Assembly: GCA_002269645.1 (NCBI GenBank)
Contig: NIVC01000744.1
Span: forward strand, 1 to 64,000
DNA: 64,000 nt
Source: Macrostomum lignano
Lineage: Eukaryota
Direction: 5' to 3'
Made by a program: the position numbers and the translations under genes. Under the pieces are notes generated by a model, which was not told the DNA's origin, made no database searches, and was given only the letters and a program-made list of their open reading frames with translations. Each line of letters opens with the position of its first letter. The first letter of the stretch is position 1. Below, one piece after another: positions 9,583 to 52,420 of the stretch.

Positions 9583-9597
9583 GGCGGGGCCGCGCAG

Positions 9598-9680
9598 CTC
9601 CTGATTTCCGTGACCCCCCCCCTGATTTCCGTGACCCCCCCCCTGATTTCCGTGACCCCCCTGATTTCCGTGAACCCCCT
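9598..9680. repeat. ~21-bp repeat x4 just after the formin stop
   Basis: CTGATTTCCGTGACCCCCCC. Confidence 0.85.
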
Positions 9681-25151: not shown

Positions 25152-25368
25152 TTTTTTTCTCTAAAATAAAAAAATTTTGACGGTGACCACCCTGATAGAA
25201 AAGTTGAACTGTTTCTACATCCTATCAGTAGCGTTAGGTTTATGAAGCTGGATAAAGTGGGGTTTTAAACCTCATCACATCCGCATTATTGTAAACCCAG
25301 CATTGTGCAGTGTCATGATGGCTTTTACAATGTCAGACTTGCTTACAGAGTTTTCATGCTCACAATCA

Positions 25369-25719
25369 TCACGATCGGGCAGCCTCTCCTGCCTTAATTG
25401 TTATACCTTTGTCTCTTGCAATCTTTTGCAATTCAAGCTGGTGGGCTCTATCATTCCCAGCTTTAACAGCAGTTGCTAAACCTCCAGCTACACCACCTGC
25501 GGCACTTACAGCGCCTGCAATGATCGGAATAAGAGCTGCTAATGGTAGGATTCCTCCTGACTTTTCATCTGTGATGCTGTGTCTTTGCTCATTACACTGA
25601 ACTATTTGCTGCACGGGATCGACTTTTACTTTGGCACCTTTAATTGATATAAGACCTGGTTTCTTTGATTCAATGATTTTATTGAGTTTATTGATGGTTC
25701 TGGTTTCAATCTTTGTCAT
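25369..25719 (-). CDS. Small protein with an adenovirus pX(mu)-like hydrophobic motif
   Basis: KSGGILPLAALIPIIAGAVSAAGGVAGGLATAV closely resembles the adenovirus pX C-terminal RGGILPLLIPLIAAAIGA. Confidence 0.6.
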   Translation of the reverse strand: MTKIETRTINKLNKIIESKKPGLISIKGAKVKVDPVQQIVQCNEQRHSITDEKSGGILPLAALIPIIAGAVSAAGGVAGGLATAVKAGNDRAHQLELQKIARDKGITIKAGEAARS

Positions 25720-25735
25720 TTTTTATTTTAATATT

Positions 25736-26773
25736 TTAATTAATTTCCGTGTCAGCTGGTATCACTAGGAGTTCAGCTCTAGTGAATGACCGTGTGGGGG
25801 ATTTAGGGTTAAAGGCCTGAGATAAAAAGTAATAGTCACCGGAGTCGGAGGTAAAATGTCTGTCTATTTTATGTACATCAAGGCTGAAGTATGGATCTGT
25901 AGCTCTTCTTTTGGTGTCTTTCTCTAGCTCTCCAGGTAGATATAAAAAGCGTAGAAACTCAGAGTTTGTCAGTATATATGGTGATTCAACTCCTGGAAGC
26001 TTAGGGTAGTTCGAGGTGTGTTTTGTGTTGTGTGTGTTGTGTGGGGTTGTCGTGTTGTTGTCTGTTCTATGAGATGCCTTAAGTTCGACAGTGTCTTGCT
26101 TAATTGCATGGGATGGTTTCAATCCAGTCATGCGTGTGACTTCATTGTTCAGTTGCTCTATAACAGTGGGGAGGCGGTCTGTCCATTTTGAATAGTACTG
26201 ACCACTTTTTAGTTTCAGCTCTTCAGCTGTCTGCTTAGTGAATAGCCTCTTGGCTAGAGTTAGATTGAATCTCTCAACGTACGCTTGGTCTCTGTGCAAG
26301 TTTGTTCTGCCATAGCGAATTTTTGTGTCACACTTATGTAGGAGACTTCGTACTGCCCCATAGAATTCTTTACCTGGGTCGGTCATAAAGATTTGGGGGT
26401 ATGTGAGCGGAGAGTTTTTATAAATATCTTGGAGGGGGGCTGCAACTGCTTCTGACTTCTTCGTCTTAAGCGGTCTCGCTTCCTTATATCTGGAGGCAAC
26501 GTCTGTAATTGTAAGAGCATACTTGTAGCCTGAGTCGTTGGGGAGAAACAAAAGATCTGCTTGGTGCGCCTCGTTAGGTTTATAGATGTTAAAGTGAGGT
26601 CTTTCAAATTTTACTGGTGGGAAATAGACTTGGTAGACTGCTTGCTTAGAGAGCCATTTTTCTACTGTAGCTTTTGGTTCCTTACTCAGCTCCATGAGTT
26701 TACTAACGGCATTTTTGCCTACAAAGAATCCTTTGTCGCTGTAGTAGAGTTTTTTAAGTTTCTGATCTGTCAT
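25736..26773 (-). CDS. Retroviral-like (rve, DDE) integrase of the Polinton, apparently intact
   Basis: HQADLLFL (D), FMTDPGKEF (D), QAYVERFN (E). 345 aa with no stops. Confidence 0.92.
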   Translation of the reverse strand: MTDQKLKKLYYSDKGFFVGKNAVSKLMELSKEPKATVEKWLSKQAVYQVYFPPVKFERPHFNIYKPNEAHQADLLFLPNDSGYKYALTITDVASRYKEARPLKTKKSEAVAAPLQDIYKNSPLTYPQIFMTDPGKEFYGAVRSLLHKCDTKIRYGRTNLHRDQAYVERFNLTLAKRLFTKQTAEELKLKSGQYYSKWTDRLPTVIEQLNNEVTRMTGLKPSHAIKQDTVELKASHRTDNNTTTPHNTHNTKHTSNYPKLPGVESPYILTNSEFLRFLYLPGELEKDTKRRATDPYFSLDVHKIDRHFTSDSGDYYFLSQAFNPKSPTRSFTRAELLVIPADTEIN

Positions 26774-32489: not shown

Positions 32490-34990
<2,501 letters not shown>

Positions 34991-35723
34991 GCATCATTTT
35001 AAGAGAGTCACTGCTACTGCTTATGTGTCATTGCTCTGGACTGGAGGTGCTCTCCTCTCTCTCCCTGTCCCTCTTTCTCACTCTCTTTCTCTCCCTTCTC
35101 AAATAGCCCGATATTGAATAACGGAGGCGACTTGTCTCATCTACTGGGCCAGACCAGCGGCCTCAAAAATAGTAAGACTTCCTTTTTATTTTCAAATTCG
35201 GTTCTCAGCCTTACTGTAAAAGTGAAACTGTACTCTACTGGGTTTTTAATAATTCGATTAGAAGAAATATTCAGAACAATAGAATAAACGTTAGTACGGT
35301 GCTGGCGTAGTTTAAATACTTTTATTAATTACTTTACCTATGCGTAAATATTAGATTTCGCACTGAGTACGAACGTACGAAAGTACGCAAAACACAGGTT
35401 TGGAAGAACGACAAGTCGAAACCAACGTTTAGTCAAGTGCTAAAGCGTCAAAAAGACAAATTGTTTAAACGCTTGCTTCGCGTTTGTTTCGAAAATTCGC
35501 TCGCAATGGAAACTTCTGTCTACATTGAATATTTGAATTTTTTAGCTGTGACTAGAGGGATCTCCATACTGACAAATAGATTCAAAAACAGATTTTGAGC
35601 TCAAAGGTTGTTTTGGTCTCAAGGGAAGCCTATCAAAATGAAAGTTTCTAAAAGGTATTTCTCATTCCGCTTGGAGCTCGCACGTCTCATCAAGAGTTAG
35701 AAGTGTCTGCAGACTGCGCCTAT

Positions 35724-36430
35724 GTGCCAGAGTCTGCACACTGTCATCCCGTACACTAAGAGGTGCCAGAGTCTACACACTGTCATCCCGTACACTAAGA
35801 GGTGCCAGAGTCTGCACACTGTCATCCCGTACACTAAGAGGTGCCAGAGTCTGCACACTGTCATCCCGTACACTAAGAGGTGCCAGAGTCTACACACTGT
35901 CATCCCGTACACTAAGAGGTGCCAGAGTCTGCACACTGTCATCCCGTACACTAAGAGGTGCCAGAGTCTGCACACTGTCATCCCGTACACTAAGAGGTGC
36001 CAGAGTCTACACACTGTCATCCCGTACACTAAGAGGTGCCAGAGTCTACACACTGTCATCCCGTACACTAAGAGGTGCCAGAGTCTACACACTGTCATCC
36101 CGTACACTAAGAGGTGCCAGAGTCTACACACTGTCATCCCGTACACTAAGAGGTGCCAGAGTCTGCACACTGTCATCCCGTACACTAAGAGGTGCCAGAG
36201 TCTGCACACTGTCATCCCGTACACTAAGAGGTGCCAGAGTCTGCACACTGTCATCCCGTACACTAAGAGGTGCCAGAGTCTACACACTGTCATCCCGTAC
36301 ACTAAGAGGTGCCAGAGTCTACACACTGTCATCCCGTACACTAAGAGGTGCCAGAGTCTGCACACTGTCATCCCGTACACTAAGAGGTGCCAGAGTCTGC
36401 ACACTGTCATCCCGTACACTAAGAGGTGCC
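35724..36430. repeat. 39-bp minisatellite x~18
   Basis: GCCAGAGTCT(G/A)CACACTGTCATCCCGTACACTAAGAGGT. Confidence 0.97.
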
Positions 36431-37096
36431 ATAATCTTCAAACAGAGGTGCCAGAAAAGTTTGTTAAAAACAAGGTAGGACATGCTTTAAGAGCTTTGTG
36501 TGCATGTAGGAAAATTTGTCAGCAAATTTCAGCAAACAAAGGCGATCACTGGTCAGATAAACTCGCACTAGCACTTCGAGATTGCTCATCACCCAAGATT
36601 CCGTTTAGAACTTCGTTGATTCATCACATTTGCTCTCCGATGTCTTTTTTCGATGGCGTTTGTTTTTTGGGTAAACTCAAATTCGTTATTTTGAATCTCT
36701 GTGGCTGATTTTTTATCTTGAAAGCCAGAGTCGATATTTCTGCTGCTTTTATTGGCAGTTTGGAAAGGATTGATGTCGTACATTTTCTTACTGGTCAGCA
36801 TATCAAAAATATTCCTGTTGAGCTTCATCTTCGAAATTTTCTCGTGGGACTCGTGGGACTCGAAAAACTTCTCCGCGCACGCATAAAAGTTCTTGAAGAA
36901 CTTGTCCGCGAACGCATCGAATTCCGTGAAGAACTTGGACTTTGATGCGTCTAGCTTTCTCTTCCAAAAAGAAAATATCTTTTTAAATCGATCAAAAATA
37001 TGTTTAATGTCGAAAAACTCCATCTTGAAATTACCTGCACACTGTCCGTTGGTAGCCGGGTGGTAGGGCGCTGAAGTCACGTGCGGGATCCCGTTG

Positions 37097-40018
37097 CTAC
37101 GCATGAGAGGCGAACTGGGGGCCGTTGTCGGAGACGAGAATCCTTGGCAGGCCCAAGTTGCAGAATACGTCACGGAGATGCCCGATGGTCCCGCCAGCAG
37201 ACGTGTCGCTGATGAGGCGAACTTCGGGCCATTTGCTGTAGGCGTCGACAATGACTATGTACATTCGACCGTTGACTGGGCCGGCGAAGTCGACATGTAG
37301 GCGGCTCCATGGTTCGTTGGGGAACAGCCAGGGATGCACTGGAGCCTTTGCTGGGTCTGCCTGATGAGCTCTGCAGGTGTCGCACTCTCTCCCGAGCTGC
37401 TCTAGTTCCTTGTCTAGCCCAGGCCACCAGACGAAGCTCCGTGCGAGGGCCTTCATTCGGCTCGCACCGGGATGTGCCAGATGCAGCTCCCGCAGCACCG
37501 ACTGGCGCAGGGTGTCCGGGATAACGACGCGAGATCCCATCAGCACACAACCGGCTTCGACTGAAAGCTCTGCTTGACGATGGGCGAAGTCCGGGAAGTC
37601 GTTAGCTGGCAGCTCCTGTCCCGACCGCAGGGCCCACAGCAGCTTTGACAGTGCCGTGTCGGCTTGAGTTGCCTTGGCAATGGCAGCAGCAGTCACTGCG
37701 ACGCTCGAATCGTCCTCTAGAGTGAGCGAGTGCACCGCGGCTTCTTCGACGAAGTTGCCCTTGAGCGGCAGGCGGGAGAGGGAATCGCAGTTTCCGTGCT
37801 TCTCGGCCGGCCGGAACTCCATGGAGTACTGGTAGCCCGATAGTCGGATGGCCCACCTCTGCATTCTGGCAGCAGCGTGCGTCGGGATTTCCTTGTCCGG
37901 GCCCAGCAGTCCGAGGAGCGGCCGATGATTCGTCACGATGGTGAAGTGGTGACCGTAAAGAAATTGGTGAAAGCGCTGCACGCCGTAGATGATTGCCAGC
38001 GCCTCCTTGTCCAGCTGGGAGTAATTGCGCTGGGCTGAGGTCAGAGACTTGCTGGCGAACGCGATCGCTTGGTCTTGGCCGTTCACGCGGTGGCTGAGCA
38101 CGACGCCAATGCCGTATGCTGACGCGTCGCACTCCAGCCGAAGAGGCAAGTCCGGGTTGAAGTGCATCAGGGCACCAGAGTCCAGCAACAGCTGCTTTGA
38201 AGCACGGAAGGCCTGGTCCTCGGGATCGCCCCACTTCCAAGTTGCGCCCTTGGTAAGCAGGTGGTTGAGAGGTGCTGCAACCGACGCCAAGTTGGGCAGG
38301 AACTTTGCATAGTGAGTCAGCATGCCCAGGTAGGAGCGCACCTGACTCACATCGGTCGGCGCCGGCGCACGCTGCACGGCCTCGATCTTGTCAGCGAGTG
38401 GCCGCAAACCGTGACGGTCGATCCGGTGACCCAGGTAGTCGATCGAATCTCTGAAGAAGGCGCACTTGGTCACGTTGATGTGCAGACCGGCCTCTTGCAG
38501 CTTGTGCAGCACTTGCATCAGGTTGGCCTTGTGCGCAGCCAATGTAGAGCCCGTCACCAAGATGTCATCCTGGTAGACTTGAACACCGTCGAGGTGCCCC
38601 GCCAGGGTGTCGAGCACGCGCTGGAAGATGGCGCTGGCTGAGCAGATGCCGAAGGGCAAGCGGTTGACTTGAAACAGTCCTCGCTGGGTGTTGACGACGA
38701 GGAACTGCTTGCTATCCTCGGAGATCGGCAGCTGCATAAACGCCTTGGCCAGGTCGAGCTTGCTCCACTTGTAGCCGCCGCCCAGCCGTGCGAACAGGTC
38801 CTCGATCCTCGGCAATGGATAGTGCTCCTGCTTGGCCGGGAACCGGGACCACAGGAGGCGGGCCTGAAACAGAAGGTGGGAGGCAGCGGCAGAGCTTAAG
38901 CAAGCGGAGGCAAGCAAGCTGGTTGGCACATAGCAGGTGCCATAGAAGCGAAACAGAAAGTTGGCAAGCTGGCTGGGGTCATGCGCTCTGGACAGCGGGT
39001 CTGCGAGCAGCTGGAAGCGGCCAGGCACATGGTGCGCGCGGACGATGATGTCGCGTTGAATGCAGGTCAGGGCGACGCGCTTCTGCAGGTCGGCAATACC
39101 TTGGTGCTTGGCGGAACCCGAGTTAATGATGCCGCAGGCGGCGGTGCTGTCAGTGTAGACTGAAACCGAGCAGCCGCTGAAGGCTTCTTGGTGCTGCAGA
39201 ATCGCAACCAGCGGGGCGGCGCACTCCTTGAGGTCGTTTTTCTCGTTGATGGTGAAGCCAAGCCGGGTGAGCAGGTTGCGCAGCTCGTGGTAGGCCCTGT
39301 CACACTCGGCTTTCGTCCTGGCCATGACGAGGAAGTCATCGATGAAAACGACGGTTGCCAGGAACCCCTTGCGACACATCATTCGCCGGGCCGCTTGCGT
39401 GAGGCGATGGAAAATGCTGACGGAGGCTCTGCTGCCGAATGGTAACCGCGTATCCACCAGGAAGGTTGAGCAGCCGTTGCCGAAGTCCCAGTGGGTGCCG
39501 GTGGCTTGGTAGCACTGCGGAGAAATTGGCACGCTGCGGTAGGCTGACGCGATGTCCACCTTTGCCATAAACCAGCCGGGCTGCATCATCCTGACGGCCT
39601 CGTCGACGGAGGTGAAGCGGAGACGCCGTTGTTGGGCATAGTGATCGTTCAGGCTGCAGCCGCGAGGGACGGAGCAATCATGGATTAGCCGGATGCCGGA
39701 GCTGTCTTTCGGAATGGCTCCCAGCGGACAGACCATCGCAGGCTTGTCCACGACTGGGACGTACCTACCGAGCCGGATTTCTTCTCCGATAACAGCTTGG
39801 ACTTGGTCGCGATTCCGGTTGACGGACTGGTAGTTGCTGCAGAGACACGGCGTAAAGTCGAAGTCATCGACAATGGAGAAGCCGCTCTCGATGCCGTCGA
39901 GAATAAAATCAGCGTCGGGGTCGCCCACAAGCTCGGAGCGCCAGGCGTCGATGCAGAGATCGCCCACTGGCTGCGTCAGATCGGACATCCGCACTGGAGG
40001 CTTGACGATGCAGGGCAC
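37097..40018 (-). CDS. 973-aa pol ORF containing two reverse transcriptases, two RNase H regions and a truncated DDE integrase
   Basis: DIRS-type RT: LGAIPKDSSGIRLIHDCS, MAKVDIASAYR, LPFG, FIDDF. RH tail: VYTDS..HHVPG..LADPLSR. Then Gypsy RT: YPLPRIEDLF, SKLDL, LPFG, YQDD. Gypsy RH: CDASAYGIG, DKEALA, ADSLSR-like. IN: HLAHPG..C..C, HVDFAGP, SDNGPQF. Confidence 0.9.
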   Translation of the reverse strand: MPCIVKPPVRMSDLTQPVGDLCIDAWRSELVGDPDADFILDGIESGFSIVDDFDFTPCLCSNYQSVNRNRDQVQAVIGEEIRLGRYVPVVDKPAMVCPLGAIPKDSSGIRLIHDCSVPRGCSLNDHYAQQRRLRFTSVDEAVRMMQPGWFMAKVDIASAYRSVPISPQCYQATGTHWDFGNGCSTFLVDTRLPFGSRASVSIFHRLTQAARRMMCRKGFLATVVFIDDFLVMARTKAECDRAYHELRNLLTRLGFTINEKNDLKECAAPLVAILQHQEAFSGCSVSVYTDSTAACGIINSGSAKHQGIADLQKRVALTCIQRDIIVRAHHVPGRFQLLADPLSRAHDPSQLANFLFRFYGTCYVPTSLLASACLSSAAASHLLFQARLLWSRFPAKQEHYPLPRIEDLFARLGGGYKWSKLDLAKAFMQLPISEDSKQFLVVNTQRGLFQVNRLPFGICSASAIFQRVLDTLAGHLDGVQVYQDDILVTGSTLAAHKANLMQVLHKLQEAGLHINVTKCAFFRDSIDYLGHRIDRHGLRPLADKIEAVQRAPAPTDVSQVRSYLGMLTHYAKFLPNLASVAAPLNHLLTKGATWKWGDPEDQAFRASKQLLLDSGALMHFNPDLPLRLECDASAYGIGVVLSHRVNGQDQAIAFASKSLTSAQRNYSQLDKEALAIIYGVQRFHQFLYGHHFTIVTNHRPLLGLLGPDKEIPTHAAARMQRWAIRLSGYQYSMEFRPAEKHGNCDSLSRLPLKGNFVEEAAVHSLTLEDDSSVAVTAAAIAKATQADTALSKLLWALRSGQELPANDFPDFAHRQAELSVEAGCVLMGSRVVIPDTLRQSVLRELHLAHPGASRMKALARSFVWWPGLDKELEQLGRECDTCRAHQADPAKAPVHPWLFPNEPWSRLHVDFAGPVNGRMYIVIVDAYSKWPEVRLISDTSAGGTIGHLRDVFCNLGLPRILVSDNGPQFASHA

Positions 40019-40069
40019 GGGAGCGGGCTGAGCGAGGCAGTTAAAAGCAGGAGGGGTAAAATCGGTTTC

Positions 40070-40102
40070 GCGCGCCGTGTCGGCGCGCTCGCTCAGTTTT
40101 TT
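40070..40102 (-). promoter_or_regulatory. Candidate -1 programmed ribosomal frameshift signal (A_AAA_AAC + 7-nt spacer + GC hairpin)
   Basis: On the - strand: CAC GCA AAA AAC TGA GCGA GCGCGCC GACAC GGCGCGC. The -1 frame is open into the pol ORF. Confidence 0.7.
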
Positions 40103-41109
40103 GCGTGATTTTGCTCGGAGTGGCTGCCCTCACAGATTCGGCAGGCATGGAGGAATCGGCAGTTGCTCCTCATGCAGCCGTTGGTGCTGTTGAAGGACAA
40201 GCACAGCTCGCGGCCTGAGGATGTCCGCGGACCCATGACGCGGCTCTTGTTGCTAGGCTGGTTTCGCTTGGCTGTCTGGTTGTACTGGTCCGTCTTAATG
40301 CTGAGCAGGTGCCTGATCGACATCTGGGCGCAGTCTTTGCCCCAGCGAAGGCTGTTAGCTGCGCGGTGCTGGCGGTAGTCATGGTCGAATCTGATCACCC
40401 GGTGCGCTGGGAATCTGTCGAATAGCTCGGCCACCTGGACATTGTACTGGGCGTAATCTTTGACTTGCTCAGTTGTGCTGTACACTTGGCCCTTGCTGGT
40501 CACCTGCGGCGCTGTGTCTTCAAGTATCTGAAGCAGGACCTTCATACTGCCGGCGAACCACTGCCCAATTGTCATGCCGTCCAGCTTGGTCGTCGACTTC
40601 TTGAGCACGAGGCCGCCAGAGCTGCCCCTGGTGAGCAGCTCGTCAGCCTGGCCTGACAGATCATCGACAAAGTCTCTGACGAGTAGACACGGCTGCCCGA
40701 CCGGCCGGGGGTTGGCTCTAGCGCTGACGGGGCCTGTTGGGTTGATAAGTTCAGCGAAAAGATTCTGCTGCTCACCTGATTCTGTACGAGCAGTCACGAC
40801 GGCGCGTTCCCGAAGCTCTCGCTCGCGTGTTTGAAGCTCTAGGAGCTGCAGCCGTTTCTGCGCCCGCCGAATCTCGCCGTCCAGGTCCGCCTCCCGTGGG
40901 TCCCGGCCTTGGTCTTGGAGCTCCTCCTGCGCACAGGGCGATGCCGATGCCGATGTCAATGCCGATGTCCCGCCGTCTTGAAGCTGTGACTGCCCCTCGT
41001 GTTGTCTCAGTCTGGCTTGCAAGGCCGACTTATTGCCTGCGGTTGAGAGGCCTCGGCTACCCAGCTCACTCTTGAGTTGTTTGACTGTTAGTCGGTCCAC
41101 ACGATGCAT
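40093..41109 (-). CDS. Gag-like ORF1 of a Ngaro/DIRS element: N-terminal SAP domain, C-terminal Cys/His zinc finger
   Basis: LTVKQLKSELGSRGLSTAGNKSALQARL matches the SAP consensus. C-terminal CLSFNSTNGCMRSNCRFLHACRICEGSH. FDHDYRQHRAANSLRWG is typical of DIRS-group gag. Confidence 0.8.
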   Translation of the reverse strand: MHRVDRLTVKQLKSELGSRGLSTAGNKSALQARLRQHEGQSQLQDGGTSALTSASASPCAQEELQDQGRDPREADLDGEIRRAQKRLQLLELQTRERELRERAVVTARTESGEQQNLFAELINPTGPVSARANPRPVGQPCLLVRDFVDDLSGQADELLTRGSSGGLVLKKSTTKLDGMTIGQWFAGSMKVLLQILEDTAPQVTSKGQVYSTTEQVKDYAQYNVQVAELFDRFPAHRVIRFDHDYRQHRAANSLRWGKDCAQMSIRHLLSIKTDQYNQTAKRNQPSNKSRVMGPRTSSGRELCLSFNSTNGCMRSNCRFLHACRICEGSHSEQNHAKN

Positions 41110-41377
41110 GATAGCCAGAGCCAGATAGTCGCAAAAAAAATTTTACGAGCCAAAGCGCTCTCGCAGCGCGCACGAGAGAGCGTGAGCGCACAAATAAAAG
41201 GGGGCCGACGCCGCCCACCCCCAACCCAACACCCCCGCCTGCCGGCCGGCACCCAGCACCCCACCTTGCGGCAGGGATGCACACGCGCGGGCCGCACGCA
41301 CAGACGGGCGGAGGGGGCGGCCCCGTCGGCTAAACACGATTACAGAGCCGGTTAAAACCGGCCCCTGAAATCGCAAC

Positions 41378-41920
41378 CATAAAATACCTATCCGGGCATT
41401 TGGGAGCTGTGTTATTTAGCTGGAAAATAGATGCCATTTTTCATCTTCAGGGATGAAGCCCTGGGCTGGATTATTAATCTAGCAGACTAAAAGAGTAAAA
41501 GTCCTCAGGAAGCGGTCCAAGTCGCTGCAAACAAGTATAGGTCCTGTGAAAGATTTAATTTCTACTACTGACTGAGAAAAGTAGACGAATAAAGATTTGA
41601 ATCGTAAAATCTCTCACAGGGTCGAATAAAGATTCGCCATAAAGGAAACGCTTTTGCACACTGAGAGCGGTGTGAGAGGATGGCGTGTGGCTGCGACTAC
41701 TGACGATGGCAAACAGGCGAGGTTCCACCGAGACTTCTAGTTAGTCAACAGGTCCATCGTTCCAAAAAGGGAACACTTATACAAAATTCATGATAAGCAT
41801 GTGGTGTACATCAAACTATTGATATAATACTCAGTCTTGAAGCTCTGGACTTTAATAGTTTTCCCCCCGATCTCATCACCATCAATGAGACTTATTTAGA
41901 TACAGACGTTAAACCATACA
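41378..41920 (+). repeat. Dispersed ~540-bp repeat, copy 1
   Basis: Aligns by eye (roughly 80%) with 51922-52420, e.g. CCATTTTTCATCTTCAGGGATGA.GCCCTGGGCTGGATTATTAAT and GAAAGATTTAATTTCTACTACTGACTGAGA. Confidence 0.85.
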
Positions 41921-42049
41921 AATTAACAAATTGGGATTGGGATTGGGTCAGCAATTGGGATTACTGACCGGCCAGCCAGACACCCACCACCCGGCTTGAT
42001 TGGGGTTTGGAGAGACTCGAGTATATGATCATCATATATATGAGACAAT

Positions 42050-44170
42050 ATATGACGGCGCGGTCAGATCCCACTTCTCCTTTTTGTTCTGGTTTTGTTC
42101 TCATCTCCCGGCCGTTTTGCCATCTGCCGCGCTTTGAGGCGCCTATCGAGTCGAGACCCCGGCCGATATTTTATTGCGTTGCCCGACCGCAGTAGCCTTG
42201 CCGGCGTAACATTTGCGACGACCTCGTTCAGAGTTTGTCGCCGGCAAGCGCGGTCTGGACAGGAGCTGTCGATTTGACACAGTACGCGACCTCGATTCCG
42301 AGGGCCCCATGCAGTGTTTCACTGAAATGCAAAAGTGGTAGGATTTGACCAGGGATTCGCTGAACTGTCAGTGTCCTCTGTCAGTGGCCGTCAGTGTCCT
42401 CTTCTGAGAGTAGGACCTTGGGGTTAGGCCAGGTGTGTAGGGAGCTTCTCCGCTAGTCTCGTGTTCTGGTTTCATCGTTTCACTTCTTCCAGCGCTGAGA
42501 TCCGCTCATCGATTTGCGTTAATTATATTACTATTATTTATCAGGTGCTAATCTGCGAATCTTATTGTTTAGATATGTGAATTTCAAGTTAATCGTGAGT
42601 ACACGAGTCAAACCTATTATAAGCATCAGCCGTTCTATCAGAATAGGGTTATCTTATCACTCAATCTAAATCTATCTGGAAGTGTGTTCAACCGTGTTAT
42701 TCATTTACTTGTACCGTACCTGCGACTGGTGGAGAAATCTTGGTAGGACTCACCGACCGGCGATAGGCAAATAGTAATTAATGGCTTTAAAATCTCCGAT
42801 CGCTGGGAATCCCCTGGGAATCCGACGAAAGGCACCTGGCCAGAGACTGCCCAGCTAGACGGAACTCTTTAAACTACCAACGGGGCGGCACCAAGGGAGG
42901 GTCAACCGCCCCCAACCACTGAATCGATTCGCTCCCAATAGAAGAGCTGCAGCAGTAGAGGACCAGCAAGTCAGATCAGGGAATGTAGAATATGGTAATT
43001 TAGTCTGGTATAATTATTATAGAGGCTACGGATTCCTACGAGATAGCAAAAATAGAGATACATGTATTTTCTTTCATGCAACTAACACTGATATTTCAAA
43101 CGACTACAAAATTATGAACTTCCTGCGCCAGAGAGTAACAGTAAAATTTATCCGCGCCAACGATACTACTCATAGTAGGAAGCAGAGAGCAGTCGGTGTC
43201 AAAATTGCTCAAGAGAGGAACGAAGATTATCAGAAATCGATAGACAGAAGTCAGCGAACTTAGCTAGACAGTCAGAGCCATCGACAGAAGAATTAGAGAA
43301 GCGAAGCGAAGCTGCGGTAGCCCAGAGATGTGCGTTGAGCAGCATAGACTTGAGACTTAGTGAAGTCGAAGGAAAGAACGCTTCGACAGACGAATCAAAA
43401 GTAGCAAGAGAGCCATCAGATCTTAAAAACGCATTGCAGGACTTGCGCCAATGGTTGGTTGGGAAAGTCCAAGCGGAGTCAGCGAAAGAAGAGCCAGACA
43501 AGAGTGCAACAAGAACTGAACTTGGAACTGAACTTAGGGAAATGAAGCAGGAATTAAGAAAGTTAGAGACAGCCATCCAGCGAGATGTGGCAGCTAAGAA
43601 AGCAACAGAGAAGCAAGAGTCAGAGAAGAGCATAGAAGCAGAAATATCAAGTCAAGTAGTGAATTCCGGATTATTTCTCGACAGCCAGATCAACGGATTA
43701 AGCGAAAAGATTTTAGTTGACACCGGCGCCTCGAATTGTCTTATTGAAAATAAATTATATCAGCACCTCTATCCAGAAAACCTAGTCTGAAGCCATGCTC
43801 TGTAAATATGCGATCCGCAAATGGCCAGATTTCAAACCTATTAGGCCAAGTGGCATTGCGCTTGCGCGTCAGATTTGGTGACTGCGAGATCACGCACCCA
43901 TTCTATGTTGCTGAAGGATTACTAACGTTAAAATTAAATTAGATATTGCGGGAAAATCCTTAGAATTCAGTGACCGAAGAATTTCGCTTGCAACATCGAG
44001 TGATAAAACGCGTTGCGTCCCTACTGGAAGTAATCAAGAAGATATCTATAGCACCGATGAGCGAAATTTATGTCAAGGCCAAATGTAAAGATATCCCAGG
44101 ACCCAGACGCTGCAGAACTCGGCTTCATCTCAGGCCGTCATCAATTTGGCGAGAAAGATGAGCCACTGGT
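42050..44170 (+). mobile_element. Degraded Ty3/Gypsy LTR-retrotransposon 5' remnant (coiled-coil gag + aspartic protease)
   Basis: ORF 43335-43790 ends with ILVDTGASNCLI (retropepsin), followed by stops and frameshifts. A possible tRNA-Ala PBS TGGTGGAGAA lies at 42727-42736 (weak). Boundaries are approximate. Confidence 0.6.
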
Positions 44171-46337
44171 AGCTACTGTTATGTAGCTACCAGATTTTTC
44201 TGTTATCTTCTGCCCACAAGCCAGAAAGACTTTCTAACACACTGGCCTCTAAGGGCCCTGTTATGAGTGTGAGGCTCACATCTCCGAATCTCTCTCTCTG
44301 CCGAAAATTATTCAAGACAGTGTATTTTATAGTCAAGCAAACAAACTGGTTTATAGTTGACAAAATGAAGAGCAATGCATAGTTTGAGTGGGGCAGGGTT
44401 ATCGCTCGAGCATTTTTCTCTGTCCTTTTGTTAGGCAACCATATCACCCCCAAGAATTGCTGCGAGTCCACTGTGTCACGCGTTCGCAATCTGCTGGCTT
44501 GGCCTTCGAACTTCAGCTTTTGTTATCTGTCCTTTAGTGTAGAGCTGGTCTGGCTGGATAGCACCAGTTGGGACGAGAGGAGGCCGTTGTTTTTTTTCGC
44601 TTCGATGTCAGCAAAATTCCAGTGCTTACAAGCTAAATCTATTACTAGATTAGACGAATCTGGTGAAGCCTTACGTTAGACTGATGAACCTGACAGAAGA
44701 GGCTCAGACGATTCATAAGGATGAGATAGTTGCGCAGAAGGAAGATGTAGAATAGATGTAGTAGATGTAGTAGTAGATGTAGTAGATAACCGCTGAAGGA
44801 AGATGTAGAACTTTTTGCAATATCAGAAACTGATTTAGAGACAGGTGCGCAAAAGCAACAGAAAGCAGCAGTCACGACGCAAAAAGTATTGTAGAAAGAA
44901 TTAGAAAGCAATTCCGCTAAAACGAGACCGTTTTAAGTGAGGCTCAGAATACAAAAGTAATTGAATTGTTACATCGTTACCATGCTCTTTCGCACACATC
45001 GGCTCGCGCGTCCACTCTTCAGTTCCCACGCTCTTCGGGTTGATTGCCAGATTTTTGTGTGCCCGTCTCCAGCCCAGGCACGTGCCGCGCTCATTGCTCT
45101 TCTTCAGCTGTTTACGCTGCCTTTTTTAAGCGTTGAAAGCGAAGTTTGAAGCCGCCGAGAGCTCGTCAATTGTAGAGTCGTTTCTTTGGACTCCAGCCTT
45201 AGAATTGAGTAGATAGAGGCACCTATTCTAGTTTCAAGAAGAGCATCAATTTTACAGTAAAATAAAAGCCTCCATCTAAGCGCGAGCACAGTACAAGTCG
45301 GCCGAAAGGGAACGAGAGAATTCAGGTGCAAATGGCAAACAGAATGCTACCTGTGACGCCCTCACGTATTACTCATTACACTGTTCGGTACTTCTGCACT
45401 TGATATGCTGCAGCAGGATGTTAGCAGCGAGTCCAATGCATCTTGTAGTGCCTGCCCTGGCTTCTCTGGTCAGCAATCAAGTTTGCTTTACGGGAAAAGC
45501 GTTGCGCGGAAATCTACGAGTATTTGAAAATTTAGAGTCCCAATTTTGCTTTAAATTTTTTTGTCCAAAAAGGCTTTGGCTAAAACATGTACCGATGGAA
45601 TGCATGCCAAAAATATAAGTTGACATAACACGCGGACTTTTGCTTTTTCTCACTACTGAAATAGGAAAATTTGTTAATCAAACTACTGTGTATTTGAATT
45701 TGAACTGAACACAGCATGCGTTAGTTTGAGGGGTAGCAAGTAGACGCTTCGAAACTGCAGTTCACTCAATGCTGCAGTACTGAAAGCAAATCCACCGAGA
45801 ATCATAAAGTTACTAAAACGGTAGCTGGATTTTTCGAAGTGCAGAATCATCGAGATTATGCGAAAATATAATATTTAATTTCTAGAAATAATTGTTATAA
45901 TGCTAAGTAGTTTTAGCTTGTACGGCTGTAGCCAAAGAATCTGGGACACTCACGCACAAAACCGAAAAAGACACTTGCGAGCGTAAATTGATACCTCCAG
46001 CCTCTTTGGCAAAAGCTATCGCAGAAAATAATGCAACCCATCTTAAATTAACAGTGGGAATTCAAACGAATCATATTTTCTCCAAAAAATCCAACAGAAG
46101 CGAACAATTACTCCCTGTCTGTACAGTCAGCTTGATAAATAAAACAAAACGGTAGTTCGCTCTCAAAATATTCCTAATCCAAGTGAGTTATAAAGCTTTG
46201 AATTAGAACACAATCTTAGCTCATACGAAATCGCAATTAGGCTTGCCTGTTCTCTGAACTACGAAATAAAAATACAAAGTTTTGGTCATTTCATATCACC
46301 ACTAGGCTCATCTAAGTTCGGATGAGTCCAAATTCCC

Positions 46338-47819
46338 TCACTCGGTAGATGACCTGTCAACCAGTACATTTATTGGATCCGAGATTTGCTTCTGCCCGTC
46401 AATTCCTTCTGGATTCAAAATTTTGCGTAGAAGATCCCGCATCTGGAGCTTCCTCTGCTTTGATCGTCCATATTTCTCAGCCTCTGCATTGTCCAAAGCG
46501 TACCGCAGTTCGAACACCATCTCGGTGCGCATTAAGTACACGGTGCCCTTCTTCAGATCTTTTACAATCTCTGAAAACTCTTTGTGTCGCTCGCAATTTT
46601 TATTAGAGCTAAATCTACCTCTGACCTGCACTTTTTGAACTGGATTGTCAATGCAGAAATCGCAGTTGCAGTTGTGCAGCAGGATGTTGGCTGATTTTGA
46701 TTTTGATTCGAATCTCATCGCCTTTTTCTCCGCATTCCACAAAGAACTCTGATTCTTTCCAGCCGTGTCGAAGAACTTTGGGCAGCAAAAGCAGACGCTC
46801 TTTACGCTGACTTTTGCTACAGACTTGCGACTGCTGTCCTCAATACTGAAGTCGAATTGTTTTGTAACACAGCGATACCGGAATTTCTTATCAAAGTAGT
46901 ATTCTTCGTGAAAGCACAGTCGGCTTAGAGCAAAAAACTCACCGAGAAGCGCGGGAAGGTTATCTCGGTTATTTTTGCTACTATTGAGGAACATTTCAAC
47001 GAAACAGGGGATCTCGACTGCAAGGCGTTTGGACTCTAGGAATGCATCAGTCATTTCACTGATGATGAGGTACAGTAGGGCTGAGATTCTGCAATCCCTG
47101 TAGCCGTCTGGGACTTCCAAAATAGCCGAATGAGTTTCATTCTCTTCGTCTGGCTTTCGCTGCCTCTGCTCTTCATGCGGCTCCACCGTGTGCTCTGACT
47201 GCTGCTGGCTCTGCTCTGCATGCGACTCCACCGTGTGCTCTGACTGCTGCTGGCTCTGCTCTGCATGCGACTCCTCCGTGTGCTCTGACTGCTGCAGGCT
47301 CTGCTCTTCATGCGACTCCTCCGTGTGCTCTGACTGCTGCAGGCTCTGCTCTGCATGCGACTCCTCCGTGTGCTCTGACTGCTGCAGGCTCTGCTCTGCA
47401 TGCGACTCCACCGTGTGCTCTGACTGCTGCTGGCCGGCCTTGCCAGTCTGGGAATGCATCAACCACAGACGCACGGAATCGTGGGTTCCATTTTGTCCCT
47501 TCAAAAGTAAATTTGAATCTACCGTCTGCAGGCATCGCAGCAGTGGTCGGCCGAAGTTTTGCTTGCTCAGTTCCTTACAATCACCTTCGCAGGCTCTCGT
47601 GAACCTGTCAAACAGGTTTACCAGTCTATTGTAAATAGCCTGTTGAGAATCTTTGAGGCAAGCATAGAGAAGTACTTCAATGGCGACGCGTCTAGTGAAG
47701 TATAATCGATCAGTAAAGTTCTCTGGCTCAAAGTTTAATTTTTTCAGCTCTGAAATTGTTTTTAAATCTAACTTGGCTTGAATTTGCCGTGCAACACTAG
47801 AAGCCTGTGCTAAATTCAT
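46338..47819 (-). CDS. Orphan intronless 493-aa ORF with an internal 14-aa (42-bp) repeat and a Cys-rich C-terminal half
   Basis: Long stop-free ORF in AT-rich sequence. QQSEHTEESHAEQSL repeats x~6 (47180-47430). CFCC, CNCDFC and C..H clusters. No family recognised. Confidence 0.6.
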   Translation of the reverse strand: MNLAQASSVARQIQAKLDLKTISELKKLNFEPENFTDRLYFTRRVAIEVLLYACLKDSQQAIYNRLVNLFDRFTRACEGDCKELSKQNFGRPLLRCLQTVDSNLLLKGQNGTHDSVRLWLMHSQTGKAGQQQSEHTVESHAEQSLQQSEHTEESHAEQSLQQSEHTEESHEEQSLQQSEHTEESHAEQSQQQSEHTVESHAEQSQQQSEHTVEPHEEQRQRKPDEENETHSAILEVPDGYRDCRISALLYLIISEMTDAFLESKRLAVEIPCFVEMFLNSSKNNRDNLPALLGEFFALSRLCFHEEYYFDKKFRYRCVTKQFDFSIEDSSRKSVAKVSVKSVCFCCPKFFDTAGKNQSSLWNAEKKAMRFESKSKSANILLHNCNCDFCIDNPVQKVQVRGRFSSNKNCERHKEFSEIVKDLKKGTVYLMRTEMVFELRYALDNAEAEKYGRSKQRKLQMRDLLRKILNPEGIDGQKQISDPINVLVDRSSTE

Positions 47820-50058: not shown

Positions 50059-51365
50059 CGAGGGATACTCTAAAAGTTTTGCAATTCAACTATTTAAAGT
50101 TAATTTTGCCAAACTTTTCTATTACAATCCTTCAAAGTAGGCTCCCCGGAACTGCAAACACTTGTGCGTCGTCCGAGCCACTTGTTCATCAAGCCCTGGA
50201 AGTCTTCAATTGGGATGCCGTCAATCGCCTCCTTCGCCGCCTGCTCCAGCTCCTCGTCGGACTGAAACCTGTGCCCCCTAAGCGACTTTTTGATTTCTGG
50301 AAAGAGCCAGAAGTCGCAGGGGGCGAGGTCTGGTGAGTAGGGCGGGTGTGGTAGTGTTGAAATGCCCTCTTGGTCCAGGAACGCTCGAGTTGCAGCAGCC
50401 GTGTGGGCGGGGGCGTTGTCATGGTGAAGTTTCTGCCCTCGCATTCCCGTCCTTGGCGCCCTCTGGGTCACGCTGTCGATCACGACTGGCAAGCACTCTT
50501 CAGTGTACCATCGAGCAGTGACTGTAGCTTGACCCTCCAGCTTCACCATCGCCACCACGCCTTGTGAGTCGAAGAAGATGGCAAACATCCGCTTGCCCTG
50601 GGACCGGGACCGCCTTGCTTTCAGGGGTCGTTGACCACCTTTCGGCACCCACTCTGCACTGCTGCGCTTTGTCTCGACGTCAAAATGATAGAGAAACGTC
50701 TCATCACCAGTGATGACCTCAGAGCGGCGCTGATGGCTCCCGTGCTCATATCGATCGATGAGAAACTGACAGAACTCCCTGCGGGCCTGTTTCTGAGCAT
50801 CTGTCAGGATGTGGGGTATCCATCGGGCACAAAGCTTCCTGACTCTCAGGTGATCGTGTAGAATCGTATCGACCGCTGCCGATCCAATGCCGACATTCAT
50901 AGCTAGCATGTCCGTGGTGATTCGCGGATCCTGATGAATCGGCTCCTGCACTGCAGCGATGTTTTCCTCCGTCGCTGCTGTCGGAGGTCTCCCGGGCCGG
51001 GGGTCGTCAGAAAAGCTGGTCCTGCCGGCCTGGAACTCGCGGTACCAGCGTGTAACCGTAGCATATGACGGCGCTTGAGCCTCCAATGTTGCTAGTAGCT
51101 CGGCATGAGTCTCAAGCGCCGTGAGCTTTCGCTTGTGGCAGTACCAAATTAGTAGCCGATTCTGCTCACGATTCAATTCCATGGCTGCAGCTGTACAGTT
51201 AAGGAGTCTCTGACTTTGACTGGGGGCTGAGCAGGCGTATATGTATGAATTCACTTGAAAATTGAGGTGGGGACTATGTACATGTTTATTGTACAGAGAG
51301 TTGGTTTTGAAGATTGTGCGACTTGCGCAAGTGGTTGAATTGCAAAACTTTTGGAGTATCCCTCG
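50059..51365 (-). mobile_element. Full-length mariner (Tc1/mariner DD34D) transposon, 1307 bp
   Basis: 32-bp TIRs CGAGGGATACTC(T/C)AAAAGTTTTGCAATTCAAC (50059-50090 / 51334-51365), with TA on both sides. Confidence 0.95.
50100..51182 (-). CDS. Mariner transposase (starts MELNREQ; 1-nt frameshift near the C-terminus, ~50168)
   Basis: WIPHIL, ITGDET, HHDNAPAH, YSPDLAPCDF, with 34 residues between D2 and D3. The conserved KCLQFRGAYFE tail is in another frame. Confidence 0.93.
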   Translation of the reverse strand: MELNREQNRLLIWYCHKRKLTALETHAELLATLEAQAPSYATVTRWYREFQAGRTSFSDDPRPGRPPTAATEENIAAVQEPIHQDPRITTDMLAMNVGIGSAAVDTILHDHLRVRKLCARWIPHILTDAQKQARREFCQFLIDRYEHGSHQRRSEVITGDETFLYHFDVETKRSSAEWVPKGGQRPLKARRSRSQGKRMFAIFFDSQGVVAMVKLEGQATVTARWYTEECLPVVIDSVTQRAPRTGMRGQKLHHDNAPAHTAAATRAFLDQEGISTLPHPPYSPDLAPCDFWLFPEIKKSLRGHRFQSDEELEQAAKEAIDGIPIEDFQGLMNKWLGRRTSVCSSGEPTLKDCNRKVWQN

Positions 51366-51921
51366 TATATACGCTCGTACCAGCAGAATATACGATAAAC
51401 GACACAACTTGCGTCCTGGCATAATTGCTATTCGGCCTCTGCTGAGCGCCTATCCCGTTCTTAAAATATCAACTGAATCAGAATCCCTCATTTATAGTTA
51501 TACATGTAGCCTTTCCATCCGTAGAATGTGCTGTTCAATAGGGGCGTTGCTGCCTCTTCCCGTTTCCACAAGAACGTTTTGTACAATTAGAGACGTGCTG
51601 TCTCTTTTCTCCTCTGGACGTACAGTCCTTCCTCGAGGCTTCTTGCCTTATCCCCTTCCCTAGCTCATAGAATTCTATGATTCAATATTCAAATATTATG
51701 AATAGAAGATGCCTCGGTCCCGAGCGGCGTTAACTCTGAATTTTGGAAGAGTGTGGTCTCAGAACCGTTAAAACTTGTGTCCCATAGTTTGTTTGAATTA
51801 CAAGAAGATAACGAATTATAAACGGTCAACCGCGATCTCGGTTGTGGTTCTGAGTCAAATAACTAACATCAGTGCTAGTGAGATCAAGAGGGACTTACAC
51901 TCCTTTCATGAGGAACGAATC

Positions 51922-52420
51922 AATAAAATACCTACGCGAGCATTCGGGAGCTGTTATTTAGCTTGAAAACAGATTCCATTTTTCATCTTCAGGGATGAGG
52001 CCCTGGGCTGGATTATTAATTCCAGCTGATTAAAGAGTAAAGTCCCACGAAGCGGTCCAAGTCACTGCAAACAGGTATAGGTATTGTGAAAGATTTAATT
52101 TCTACTACTGACTGAGAGAAGTAGACGAATAAAGATTTGAATTGTAAAATCTCTCGCACAGGCCGAATAAGTTTCGCCATAAAATAAACGCTTTGCACCC
52201 TTGGAGCGGTGTGAGAGGACGGCATGTGGCTGCAGAAGCTACTGGCGAAGGAAAACTCGATCTGCCTGCGCGAGATTCCACCACGACTTTTAGTGCGTCA
52301 CAGGCCCCATCGTTCCGAAATTTGGAAAACTTGAACAAAAATCATGTTAAACACGAGCGTATAATGTAAGCTTAGTGCTGGAATATTTCCTCTATCAGAT
52401 ACAGACGCTTAACCATAGAA
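51922..52420 (+). repeat. Dispersed ~500-bp repeat, copy 2
   Basis: Same orientation as 41378-41920. Confidence 0.85.

What the first reader, a model, noticed from the sequence alone, without database searches (positions are those of the whole stretch)
37097..41109. Two-RT hybrid retroelement: Ngaro/DIRS gag-RT-RH fused in frame to a Gypsy RT-RH-integrase where the tyrosine recombinase should be
Seen: one stop-free 973-codon ORF holds a DIRS-type RT (FIDD) and RNase H tail. At ~38840 (..LLWSRF|PAKQEHYPLP..) it switches to a Gypsy RT (YQDD), RNase H and an HHCC-DD integrase. Known: DIRS/Ngaro elements integrate with a tyrosine recombinase encoded just after RH, and Gypsy elements use a DDE integrase; the two orders are not normally fused. 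Inference: a recombinant that swapped YR for a DDE integrase module, either a one-off dead chimera or a member of an undescribed hybrid family. Both internal junctions (this fusion and the RT-RH deletion) keep the frame, which would happen only about 1 time in 9 by chance.
Basis: partly seen in the sequence, partly recalled or inferred. Interest (0 to 1): 0.85.

Follow-up and report, generated by a model that had tools for sequence, protein, structure and literature searches.

The report
Dead Ngaro–Gypsy retrotransposon chimera
Pieces of two unrelated retrotransposons (a Ngaro-like element and a Ty3/Gypsy element) are joined in frame into one long open reading frame, but every enzyme in it is broken and no second copy was found, so it is best read as ordinary, recently formed transposon wreckage and not as a new kind of mobile element.

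Summary
Minus-strand ORF 37097..40018 is 973 codons without a stop. It holds a Ngaro/DIRS-type RT (FIDD) with an RNase H tail, joined at about 38831-38842 to a Ty3/Gypsy RT (YQDD), RNase H and integrase. A Ngaro ORF1 (gag-like) lies upstream at 40093..41109.

Every module is damaged:
- The Ngaro RT/RH lacks about 157 aa (thumb and first RNase H Asp).
- The Gypsy RT lacks its N-terminal motifs, and gag and protease are absent.
- The Gypsy RNase H has its invariant catalytic Asp changed to Asn.
- The integrase has a frameshifting ~17-nt deletion and is cut off just before the catalytic Glu.
- There is no tyrosine recombinase, no LTR and no split direct repeat.

Two searches of 5.8 billion protein clusters, one of 1.84 billion representatives and two metagenome scans (one using the junction peptide) found no other sequence spanning the junction. 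The host genome itself is not in those collections.

The "1 in 9" in-frame argument fails. There are three internal lesions and one breaks the frame (chance of at least 2 of 3 in frame is about 0.26). The ORF was also noticed because it is long.

Verdict: a young, single-locus, non-functional chimera. A hybrid family is not supported, though not strictly excluded.

The parts
41110..41378 (-). GC-rich leader upstream of Ngaro ORF1; probable 5' end of the Ngaro-derived part
   Evidence: GC is 65-69% here and drops to about 40-48% at 41379. An unrelated ~420-bp dispersed repeat starts exactly at 41379. The boundary is inferred.
40093..41109 (-). Ngaro ORF1 (gag-like), 338 aa, with an N-terminal SAP domain and a C-terminal Cys/His knuckle; intact ORF
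   Evidence: ORF listed. SAP PF02037 E=1.6e-12. BLASTP E=4e-19 over 231 aa to ORF1 of the intact Ngaro relative L001, including the C-terminal CxxFNxxxGCxxxxCxFxHxC motif.
38840..40018 (-). Ngaro/DIRS-type RT/RNase H remnant (aa 1-393 of the 973-aa ORF); RT domain aa 136-260 with FIDD at aa 225
   Evidence: It is 40-52% identical to 500-660-aa RVT_1-only proteins. These include P0126, which lies in an element with YR and split direct repeats. RVT_1 E=3.9e-13.
39229..39245 (-). In-frame internal deletion point in the Ngaro RT/RH (about 157 aa, ~470 nt missing: thumb/connection and the first RNase H Asp motif)
   Evidence: Alignments A1 and of 108 relatives show a gap after aa 261, with a median of 157 residues in the others. 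23 of 83 conserved columns are deleted. tblastn maps P0122 aa 300 to 39245 and aa 469 to 39229.
38831..38842 (-). Ngaro|Gypsy junction (..LLWSRF|PAKQEHYPLP..), in frame
   Evidence: Codon-by-codon comparison with the M. lignano Gypsy gene shows homology starting at the A/K-Q-E-H codons. GC content and GC3 do not change across the junction.
38420..38833 (-). Ty3/Gypsy RT, N-terminally truncated (starts at RVT_1 profile position 35; YQDD at aa 482)
   Evidence: Pfam stretch aa 396-533 matches profile positions 35-205. P0001 aligns only from its aa 518, so 517 aa of gag, protease and the RT N-terminus are absent.
37832..38233 (-). Gypsy RNase H; the catalytic Asp is replaced by Asn (N697, codon 37928-37930)
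   Evidence: RT_RNaseH and RT_RNaseH_2 hits. Position 697 is D in 97 of 97 relatives, including the two closest, and N here.
37361..37522 (-). Integrase HHCC zinc-binding domain (H846, H849, C879, C882), intact
   Evidence: PF17921 E=5e-13; residues checked.
37042..37315 (-). Integrase catalytic core, damaged. D910 and D925 are present. A ~17-nt deletion near 37098-37110 shifts the frame. Homology ends at ..HPATNGQ (37042), just before the catalytic Glu. About 200 aa of the C-terminus and any 3' LTR are missing
   Evidence: rve is partial, profile 3-81 of 102. P0001 aa 1093-1120 map to 37125-37042 in another frame, and P0001 is 1320 aa long.

Best explanation
This is a non-functional, single-locus chimeric remnant of two unrelated retrotransposons. 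It is not a working element.

Anatomy
- The 5' part is a Ngaro-like (DIRS order) element: leader, ORF1, and an RT/RH carrying a ~157-aa internal deletion.
- It is joined head to tail, by non-homologous joining, to an internal fragment of a Ty3/Gypsy pol gene: RT without its N-terminal motifs, then RNase H, then a partial integrase.
- The join removed the Ngaro stop codon and tyrosine recombinase, and the Gypsy 5' LTR, gag and protease.
- It happens to keep the reading frame. Because both pieces were recently functional coding sequence in GC-rich DNA, one 973-codon ORF results.

Why it cannot work
- Nothing in it can catalyse reverse transcription, RNase H cleavage or integration.
- It has neither LTRs nor split direct repeats, so it also cannot be mobilised in trans.

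Most likely route (inferred, about 55% within this explanation)
- A Gypsy copy inserted in the same orientation into the YR region of a resident Ngaro copy.
- Genomic deletions then removed the stretch from the end of the Ngaro RT/RH to the middle of the Gypsy RT.
- Other deletions removed everything 3' of the integrase core.
- The alternative route, a chimeric cDNA, is listed as a rival.

Shown versus inferred: the anatomy, the lesions and the absence of relatives spanning the junction in public data are shown. The order of events and single-copy status in the host genome are inferred.
For: - The ORF and both RT domains are real.
- Ngaro part: a median of 157 aa is deleted after aa 261, 23 of 83 conserved columns are gone, and 8 of the remaining 60 are mismatched against a mean of 1.3 in relatives.
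- Gypsy part: it starts at RVT_1 profile position 35 and at aa 518 of the 1320-aa closest relative. There are four private changes at positions that are at least 95% conserved, including the RNase H catalytic D697N.
- Integrase: frameshifted and truncated before the DDE Glu.
- No YR is present anywhere in the window.
- No direct repeats flank the block. Intact relatives do have them: identical 300-nt LTRs in L002 and A1/B1/A2/B2 split repeats in L001.
- No other Ngaro or Gypsy copy is in the window.
- No protein or contig spans the junction in any search:
  - Whole-ORF search, maximum 59-68% coverage, Gypsy half only.
  - Junction-centred search, all hits at most 50% coverage.
  - Representative library: every listed best-scoring stretch starts at aa 386 or later, and none of the 149 sequences retrieved holds a Ngaro-type segment.
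  - Degenerate junction DNA pattern, 0 hits.
  - Metagenome scan that included the junction peptide FPAKQEHY, Gypsy-only loci.
- The surrounding window is a transposon-rich region (Polinton, mariner-like element, satellites), where nested insertions and deletions are common.
Against: - The ORF has no stop in 2919 nt. This limits neutral divergence since loss of constraint to about 3% or less. Several large lesions therefore accumulated quickly, or arose together when the chimera formed.
- The break falls very near the natural end of the Ngaro RT/RH ORF, which is a mild coincidence for a random deletion.
- The host genome is not in the searched collections. The nearest relatives are 65% and 52% identical, and exact look-ups failed. 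Single-copy status is therefore not demonstrated.
- No remnant of the Ngaro 3' part lies beyond the Gypsy fragment, so the nested-insertion route needs at least two large deletions.
Confidence: 0.8

Rival explanations
1. Chimeric cDNA made by reverse-transcriptase template switching. Minus-strand synthesis started internally on a Gypsy RNA (within the integrase region). It jumped non-homologously to a co-packaged Ngaro RNA near the end of RT/RH, made a second intramolecular jump (the 157-aa deletion), and ran to the Ngaro RNA 5' end. The dead-on-arrival cDNA was then captured at a chromosome break.
For: - The two pieces are collinear, in the same orientation and head to tail.
- The 5' boundary looks like a natural Ngaro 5' end, while the 3' boundary is arbitrary.
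- Several large lesions coexist with zero stop codons in 2.9 kb, which fits lesions made in one event.
- GC and GC3 are the same in both halves.
Against: - Non-homologous template switches between unrelated RNAs are rare compared with homologous ones (general knowledge).
- The 17-nt frameshifting deletion and the D697N change need extra events.
- No parental sequences are available to look for microhomology at the breakpoints.
- The natural 5' end is explained equally well by an ordinary Ngaro insertion.
Confidence: 0.25
2. A degraded copy of a real, propagating hybrid family that uses a Ngaro gag and RT with a Gypsy RNase H and DDE integrase in place of the tyrosine recombinase.
For: - The in-frame junction sits exactly where the YR normally starts.
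- The long open frame implies a recent origin from coding sequence.
- The host genome could not be searched.
Against: - The junction itself truncates the Gypsy RT, so any progenitor with this junction carries a useless partial RT.
- There are no LTR-like or split-repeat termini.
- IN domains are reported not to be found in DIRS-order elements (PMC12440569; PMC6681497 describes YR in place of IN).
- No junction-spanning or Ngaro-plus-integrase protein turned up among 5.8 billion clusters or 1.84 billion representatives, or in the metagenome scans.
- The frame is kept at only 2 of 3 internal lesions (P = 0.26).
Confidence: 0.05
3. Assembly artefact: the two elements are not adjacent in the real genome.
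For: The region is repeat-rich, with satellites and many transposons. Reads were not available.
Against: - The two halves share only distant protein-level RT similarity (20-28%), so there is no shared repeat that would mislead an overlap assembler at this point.
- The join is seamless, in frame, with no N and no composition change.
Confidence: 0.07
4. A host-domesticated fusion gene kept open by selection.
For: A 973-codon open frame preceded by an intact 338-aa ORF1.
Against: - Catalytic residues and whole subdomains are lost in every module.
- The ORF ends through a frameshift inside the integrase.
- No orthologue spans it in any database.
- Openness is explained by youth: about 3% divergence or less suffices.
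Confidence: 0.02

Closest known systems
Ngaro-like retrotransposons (order DIRS, tyrosine-recombinase retroelements)
   Same: - ORF1 is homologous to ORF1 of an intact Ngaro relative.
- The RT/RH is 40-52% identical to Ngaro-type RT/RH proteins. These include one (P0126, locus L001) that sits in an element with the canonical A1-ORFs-B1-A2-B2 split direct repeats and a YR ORF.
- The best named relative is from the flatworm Macrostomum lignano (P0122).
   Different: - No tyrosine recombinase and no split direct repeats.
- A 157-aa deletion removes the RT thumb and the first RNase H Asp.
- The natural stop codon is replaced by the Gypsy fragment.
- ORF1 carries a SAP domain that was not detected in the relative's ORF1.
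Ty3/Gypsy (Metaviridae) LTR retrotransposons of the group NCBI labels 'K02A2.6-like'
   Same: - RT-RNase H-HHCC-integrase order.
- 65% identity over 577 aa to a Macrostomum lignano element that has identical LTRs and the same GC-rich-in-AT-rich-flank pattern.
   Different: - Only an internal fragment, corresponding to aa 518-1120 of a 1320-aa polyprotein.
- No LTRs, gag, protease or RT N-terminal motifs.
- RNase H D697N.
- Integrase frameshifted and lacking the catalytic Glu.
Nested or rearranged transposon composites (chimeric copies from insertion of one element into another followed by deletion)
   Same: - Two unrelated elements are juxtaposed in a transposon-dense region, each truncated at the joint.
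- Chimeric natural sequences from insertion of copies inside existing ones are noted for YR elements in PMC6681497.
   Different: The joint here happens to be in frame and both pieces are young, which gives an unusually long uninterrupted ORF with two RT domains.

Membership tests
Ngaro-like element (order DIRS) | DIRS/Ngaro-type RT/RNase H | tested here: met
   Homology at 40-52% identity (E down to 3e-81) to Ngaro-type RT/RH proteins, and RVT_1 E=3.9e-13. The domain is incomplete because of the 157-aa deletion.
Ngaro-like element (order DIRS) | Gag-like ORF1 upstream of RT/RH | tested here: met
   BLASTP E=4e-19 to ORF1 of the intact relative L001.
Ngaro-like element (order DIRS) | Tyrosine recombinase ORF after RT/RH | tested here: not met
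   tblastn with the YR of L001 and the YR N-terminus of P0122 finds nothing with E<0.01 in the 64-kb window. The Gypsy fragment occupies that position.
Ngaro-like element (order DIRS) | Split direct repeats A1 ... B1 A2 B2 | tested here: not met
   No direct repeats other than satellites in 34500-45000. The relative L001 shows them clearly.
Ty3/Gypsy LTR retrotransposon | pol order RT-RNase H-integrase with Gypsy-type RT | tested here: met
   Pfam domain order and 65% identity to the M. lignano Gypsy polyprotein. The RT lacks profile positions 1-34.
Ty3/Gypsy LTR retrotransposon | Long terminal repeats flanking the coding region | tested here: not met
   One search finds none. The relative L002 has 100% identical LTRs of 300 nt.
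Ty3/Gypsy LTR retrotransposon | gag and aspartic protease upstream of RT | tested here: not met
   The first 517 aa of the relative have no counterpart. The upstream ORF is of Ngaro type.
Ty3/Gypsy LTR retrotransposon | Integrase with HHCC and a complete D,D,E triad | tested here: not met
   HHCC and both Asp residues are present. The frame is broken, and homology stops at ..NGQ, immediately before the Glu of ..NGQAER.
Hypothetical Ngaro-Gypsy hybrid family | Several copies at different loci sharing the same junction | tested here: inconclusive
   None found in the window or in public protein and metagenome collections. The host genome is not in those collections.
Hypothetical Ngaro-Gypsy hybrid family | At least one intact RT plus an intact integration enzyme and defined termini | tested here: not met
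   Both RTs are truncated, the integrase is broken, and there are no termini.

The most novel reading that the evidence does not exclude
This locus is a decayed copy of a lineage in which a Ngaro-type gag/RT acquired a Gypsy RNase H-integrase cassette in place of its tyrosine recombinase. That would be a natural exchange of integration modules between the DIRS and LTR orders that spread, at least briefly, in the host genome.
Probability: 0.04. Interest if true: 0.8.

Novelty: new member of a known kind. Interest (0 to 1): 0.15.

Why it matters
As it stands, it matters little. It is a tidy example of how two young retrotransposon fragments joined by chance can imitate a multi-domain "two-RT" polyprotein, and it is a warning for automated transposon classification and gene prediction.

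It would matter only if further copies with the same junction exist. That would document a swap of integration modules (tyrosine recombinase to DDE integrase) between two retroelement orders. Such swaps are invoked to explain the origin of DIRS-order elements but have not been caught in the act.

The locus also adds new, fairly divergent Ngaro-like and Gypsy sequences (52% and 65% identity to the nearest named relatives, both from Macrostomum lignano).

Tried and rejected
- Exact-sequence look-ups of the 973-aa ORF, ORF1 and eight other window ORFs found nothing. The source genome is not in the collection and the organism could not be named.
- Searches for a second junction-spanning sequence were all negative:
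  - Whole ORF.
  - 210-aa junction-centred peptide.
  - Whole ORF against 1.84 billion representatives, followed by BLASTP of the Ngaro half against the 149 sequences retrieved from the top 150. This gave only 20-28% RT-to-RT cross-matches.
  - Degenerate junction DNA pattern in metagenomes.
  - Metagenome scan with peptide patterns that included FPAKQEHY.
- One apparent junction-spanning match (L011, query aa 322-442) proved to be a spurious alignment extension through a stop codon into ordinary Gypsy RT sequence.
- A search for YR sequence in the window found none.
- A search for LTRs, split repeats or another copy of either element in the window found none.
- I considered whether 'LLWSRF' at the junction is the start of the YR N-terminal motif (..SWLRFC.. 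in P0122, ..SYLRFC.. in L001). The spacing does not fit, so this is unproven.
- I considered reading the 157-aa gap as a spliced intron, or finding microhomology at the breakpoints. Neither can be tested without the parental sequences.
- Literature searches found no description of a DIRS-order element with a DDE integrase and no paper linking Macrostomum and Ngaro.

Full report
**1. Checking the observation**

The minus strand carries an uninterrupted ORF at 37097..40018 (973 codons), preceded by a 338-codon ORF at 40093..41109. At the ORF's base composition (61% GC) the chance of 973 consecutive open codons is about 5e-13, so the open frame is not a chance event.

Pfam finds the following in the ORF:
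- RVT_1 with two separate stretches
- RT_RNaseH and RT_RNaseH_2
- Integrase_H2C2
- a partial rve core (profile positions 3-81 of 102)

Scanned alone, the N-terminal 393 aa still pass RVT_1 (aa 136-260, E=3.9e-13). The ORF therefore really contains two reverse-transcriptase domains.

- FIDD at aa 225
- YQDD at aa 482
- ..LLWSRF|PAKQEH.. at aa 393/394, DNA about 38840

**2. What the two halves are**

*The N-terminal half (aa 1-393) is Ngaro-like.*
- It is 40-52% identical to a large set of 500-660-aa RVT_1-only proteins. The best named one is from Macrostomum lignano.
- One of these, P0126, lies in locus L001. That locus has ORF1, RT/RH, a tyrosine-recombinase ORF overlapping the end of RT/RH, and split direct repeats: A1/A2 of 198 nt at 100% identity and B1/B2 of 141 nt at 99%. 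This is the architecture described for Ngaro-like elements (PMC6681497).
- The window's upstream ORF is homologous to L001's ORF1, including the C-terminal Cys/His knuckle (E=4e-19).

*The C-terminal half (aa ~396-973) is Ty3/Gypsy.*
- It is 65% identical over 577 aa to a 1320-aa Gypsy polyprotein of M. lignano (P0001), and about 50% identical to many 'K02A2.6-like' Gypsy polyproteins.
- The M. lignano element has 100% identical LTRs of 300 nt. It is 64% GC inside 41% GC flanks.
- The window block 37042-41378 shows the same pattern: about 60% GC inside flanks of about 40-45%.

**3. State of each module**

*Ngaro RT/RH*
- Against 108 relatives there is a gap after aa 261 where the others have a median of 157 residues.
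- 23 of 83 columns conserved at 90% or more fall inside that gap. They include the first RNase H Asp motif and the thumb/connection region.
- 8 of the 60 remaining conserved columns are mismatched, against a mean of 1.3 for relatives.
- The Ngaro reading frame is kept essentially to its natural end. Relatives stop a median of 5 aa after aa 393.

*Gypsy RT*
- Homology starts at RVT_1 profile position 35 and at aa 518 of P0001.
- The block ..VKKDGSVRICGDYK.., the protease, gag and the 5' LTR are therefore all absent.

*Gypsy RNase H*
- 133 columns that are at least 95% conserved in 97 relatives are covered by the window sequence. Eleven of them differ in the window.
- Seven of those differences are shared with the two closest relatives and so are lineage-specific.
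- Four are private. One of them is D697N at an Asp present in 97 of 97 relatives (..TDH.. becomes ..TNH..), which is the catalytic Asp.

*Integrase*
- HHCC and both Asp residues are present.
- After ..SDNGPQFAS a ~17-nt deletion shifts the frame.
- Homology continues in another frame to ..HPATNGQ at 37042. It then stops abruptly, just before the Glu of the D,D,E triad, and about 200 aa short of the relative's end.

*Elsewhere*
- No tyrosine recombinase is detectable in the window.
- No LTRs or split repeats flank the block.
- No other Ngaro or Gypsy copy is present in the 64 kb.

**4. Boundaries**

- On the 5' side, a GC-rich 269-nt leader ends at 41378. A ~420-bp dispersed repeat (83% identical to 51923-52353) begins at 41379. 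This looks like a natural Ngaro 5' end, though that is an inference.
- On the 3' side, the Gypsy fragment abuts AT-rich DNA at 37042. That DNA is followed by a 39-bp minisatellite and a 2.5-kb (CAGA)n tract.
- The window also holds a Polinton-like polB/integrase pair and a mariner-like transposase. This is a transposon-dense region.

**5. The in-frame argument**

- There are three internal lesions, not two: the 157-aa deletion (in frame), the fusion (in frame) and the integrase deletion (out of frame).
- With a one-in-three chance each, at least two of three being in frame has probability 7/27, or 0.26.
- The object was also selected for attention because it is a long ORF.
- The absence of stops implies youth. 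About 3.1% of random substitutions in this ORF would create a stop, so P(no stop) falls to 0.07 at 3% divergence.
- GC and GC3 are the same in both halves (0.76 and 0.75).

**6. Is there a family?**

Every search for a second sequence spanning the junction was negative.
- In the whole-ORF search of 5.8 billion clusters, the best hits cover 59-68% of the query, which is the Gypsy half only.
- In the 210-aa junction-centred query, all 418 hits cover 50% or less.
- In the whole-ORF phmmer search of 1.84 billion representatives, every listed best-scoring stretch starts at query aa 386 or later. BLASTP of the Ngaro half against the 149 sequences retrieved from the top 150 gives only 20-28% RT-to-RT cross-matches. 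The multi-stretch top hits are tandem Gypsy gene models.
- A degenerate DNA pattern for WSRFPAKQEHYPLP gave 0 hits in metagenome contigs.
- A metagenome scan whose patterns included FPAKQEHY returned 13 Gypsy-only loci. One apparent extension into the Ngaro tail (L011) is a spurious alignment through a stop codon.

There is one caveat. The host genome is evidently not in these collections, so copy number in the host could not be measured.

[quoted passage not shown] I found no report of a DIRS-integrase hybrid.

**7. Explanation**

The best-supported reading is a young, dead, single-locus chimera. The joint itself truncates the Gypsy RT, so even an undecayed progenitor with this junction would carry a useless partial RT. 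The copy also lacks any termini that a YR or an IN could act on.

Two routes could have formed it.
- The first is a same-orientation nested insertion of a Gypsy element into the YR region of a Ngaro copy, followed by deletions. I favour this one slightly, because nesting and deletion are routine in such regions.
- The second is a chimeric cDNA made by non-homologous template switching and then captured in the chromosome. This route accounts somewhat better for many lesions in a very young sequence and for the natural-looking 5' end.

They cannot be separated without the parental sequences. An assembly artefact is unlikely, because the halves share no nucleotide-level repeat at the joint, but it has not been excluded. 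Domestication is very unlikely.

**8. Verdict**

- The novelty is low. These are new, divergent members of known Ngaro-like and Gypsy families, combined in a known kind of rearrangement product.

Noticed in passing
window 21356-26773 (-): Polinton/Maverick-like block. It comprises an 872-aa ORF with protein-primed family-B DNA polymerase (PF03175, E=2e-16), a 368-aa ORF with no Pfam hit, and a 345-aa ORF with an rve integrase core.
   Followed up: partly
window 50100-51422 (-): Intact-looking 440-aa Tc1/mariner-like transposase, with HTH_48, DDE_3 and Transposase_1 hits.
   Followed up: partly
window 32499-34991 and 35724-36431: A 2.5-kb (CAGA)n microsatellite, followed by an 18-copy 39-bp minisatellite (98% matches) that is open on both strands. 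They lie immediately 3' of the chimera.
   Followed up: no
window 41379-41799 and 51923-52353: A ~420-bp dispersed repeat at 83% identity, in the same orientation. One copy starts exactly at the 5' edge of the GC-rich chimera, and the other lies next to the mariner-like element. Its identity is unknown.
   Followed up: partly
window 36589-37040 (-): The AT-rich flank (about 39% GC) stays open for about 150 codons in the same frame as the frameshifted integrase tail. It contains a 33-nt imperfect repeat (..KFFxxFxAxAxKFF..). It has no Pfam hit, and the open frame is unexpected for AT-rich non-coding DNA.
   Followed up: no
window 40093-41109 (-), aa 5-38: The Ngaro ORF1 carries an N-terminal SAP DNA-binding domain (PF02037, E=1.6e-12). 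No SAP hit was found in ORF1 of the intact Ngaro relative L001.
   Followed up: partly
window 43335-43790 (+): A 151-aa ORF ending in a retroviral-type aspartic protease motif (..LVDTGAS..), with a weak gag-asp_proteas hit at E=9e-4. It is probably a fragment of another LTR element on the opposite strand.
   Followed up: no
window 46338-47819 (-): A 493-aa ORF with an internal tandem peptide repeat (QSEHTEESHAEQSLQ...) and no Pfam family. It is possibly a host gene or an unknown transposon ORF.
   Followed up: no
L002 (Macrostomum lignano NIVC01000860.1) 5686-10323: The closest Gypsy relative looks like a very young, intact element. It has a 1320-aa gag-pol ORF and 100% identical LTRs of 300 nt, and it is 64% GC in 41% GC flanks. 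The pattern resembles the window, which hints that the window comes from a related flatworm. This is unverified.
   Followed up: partly
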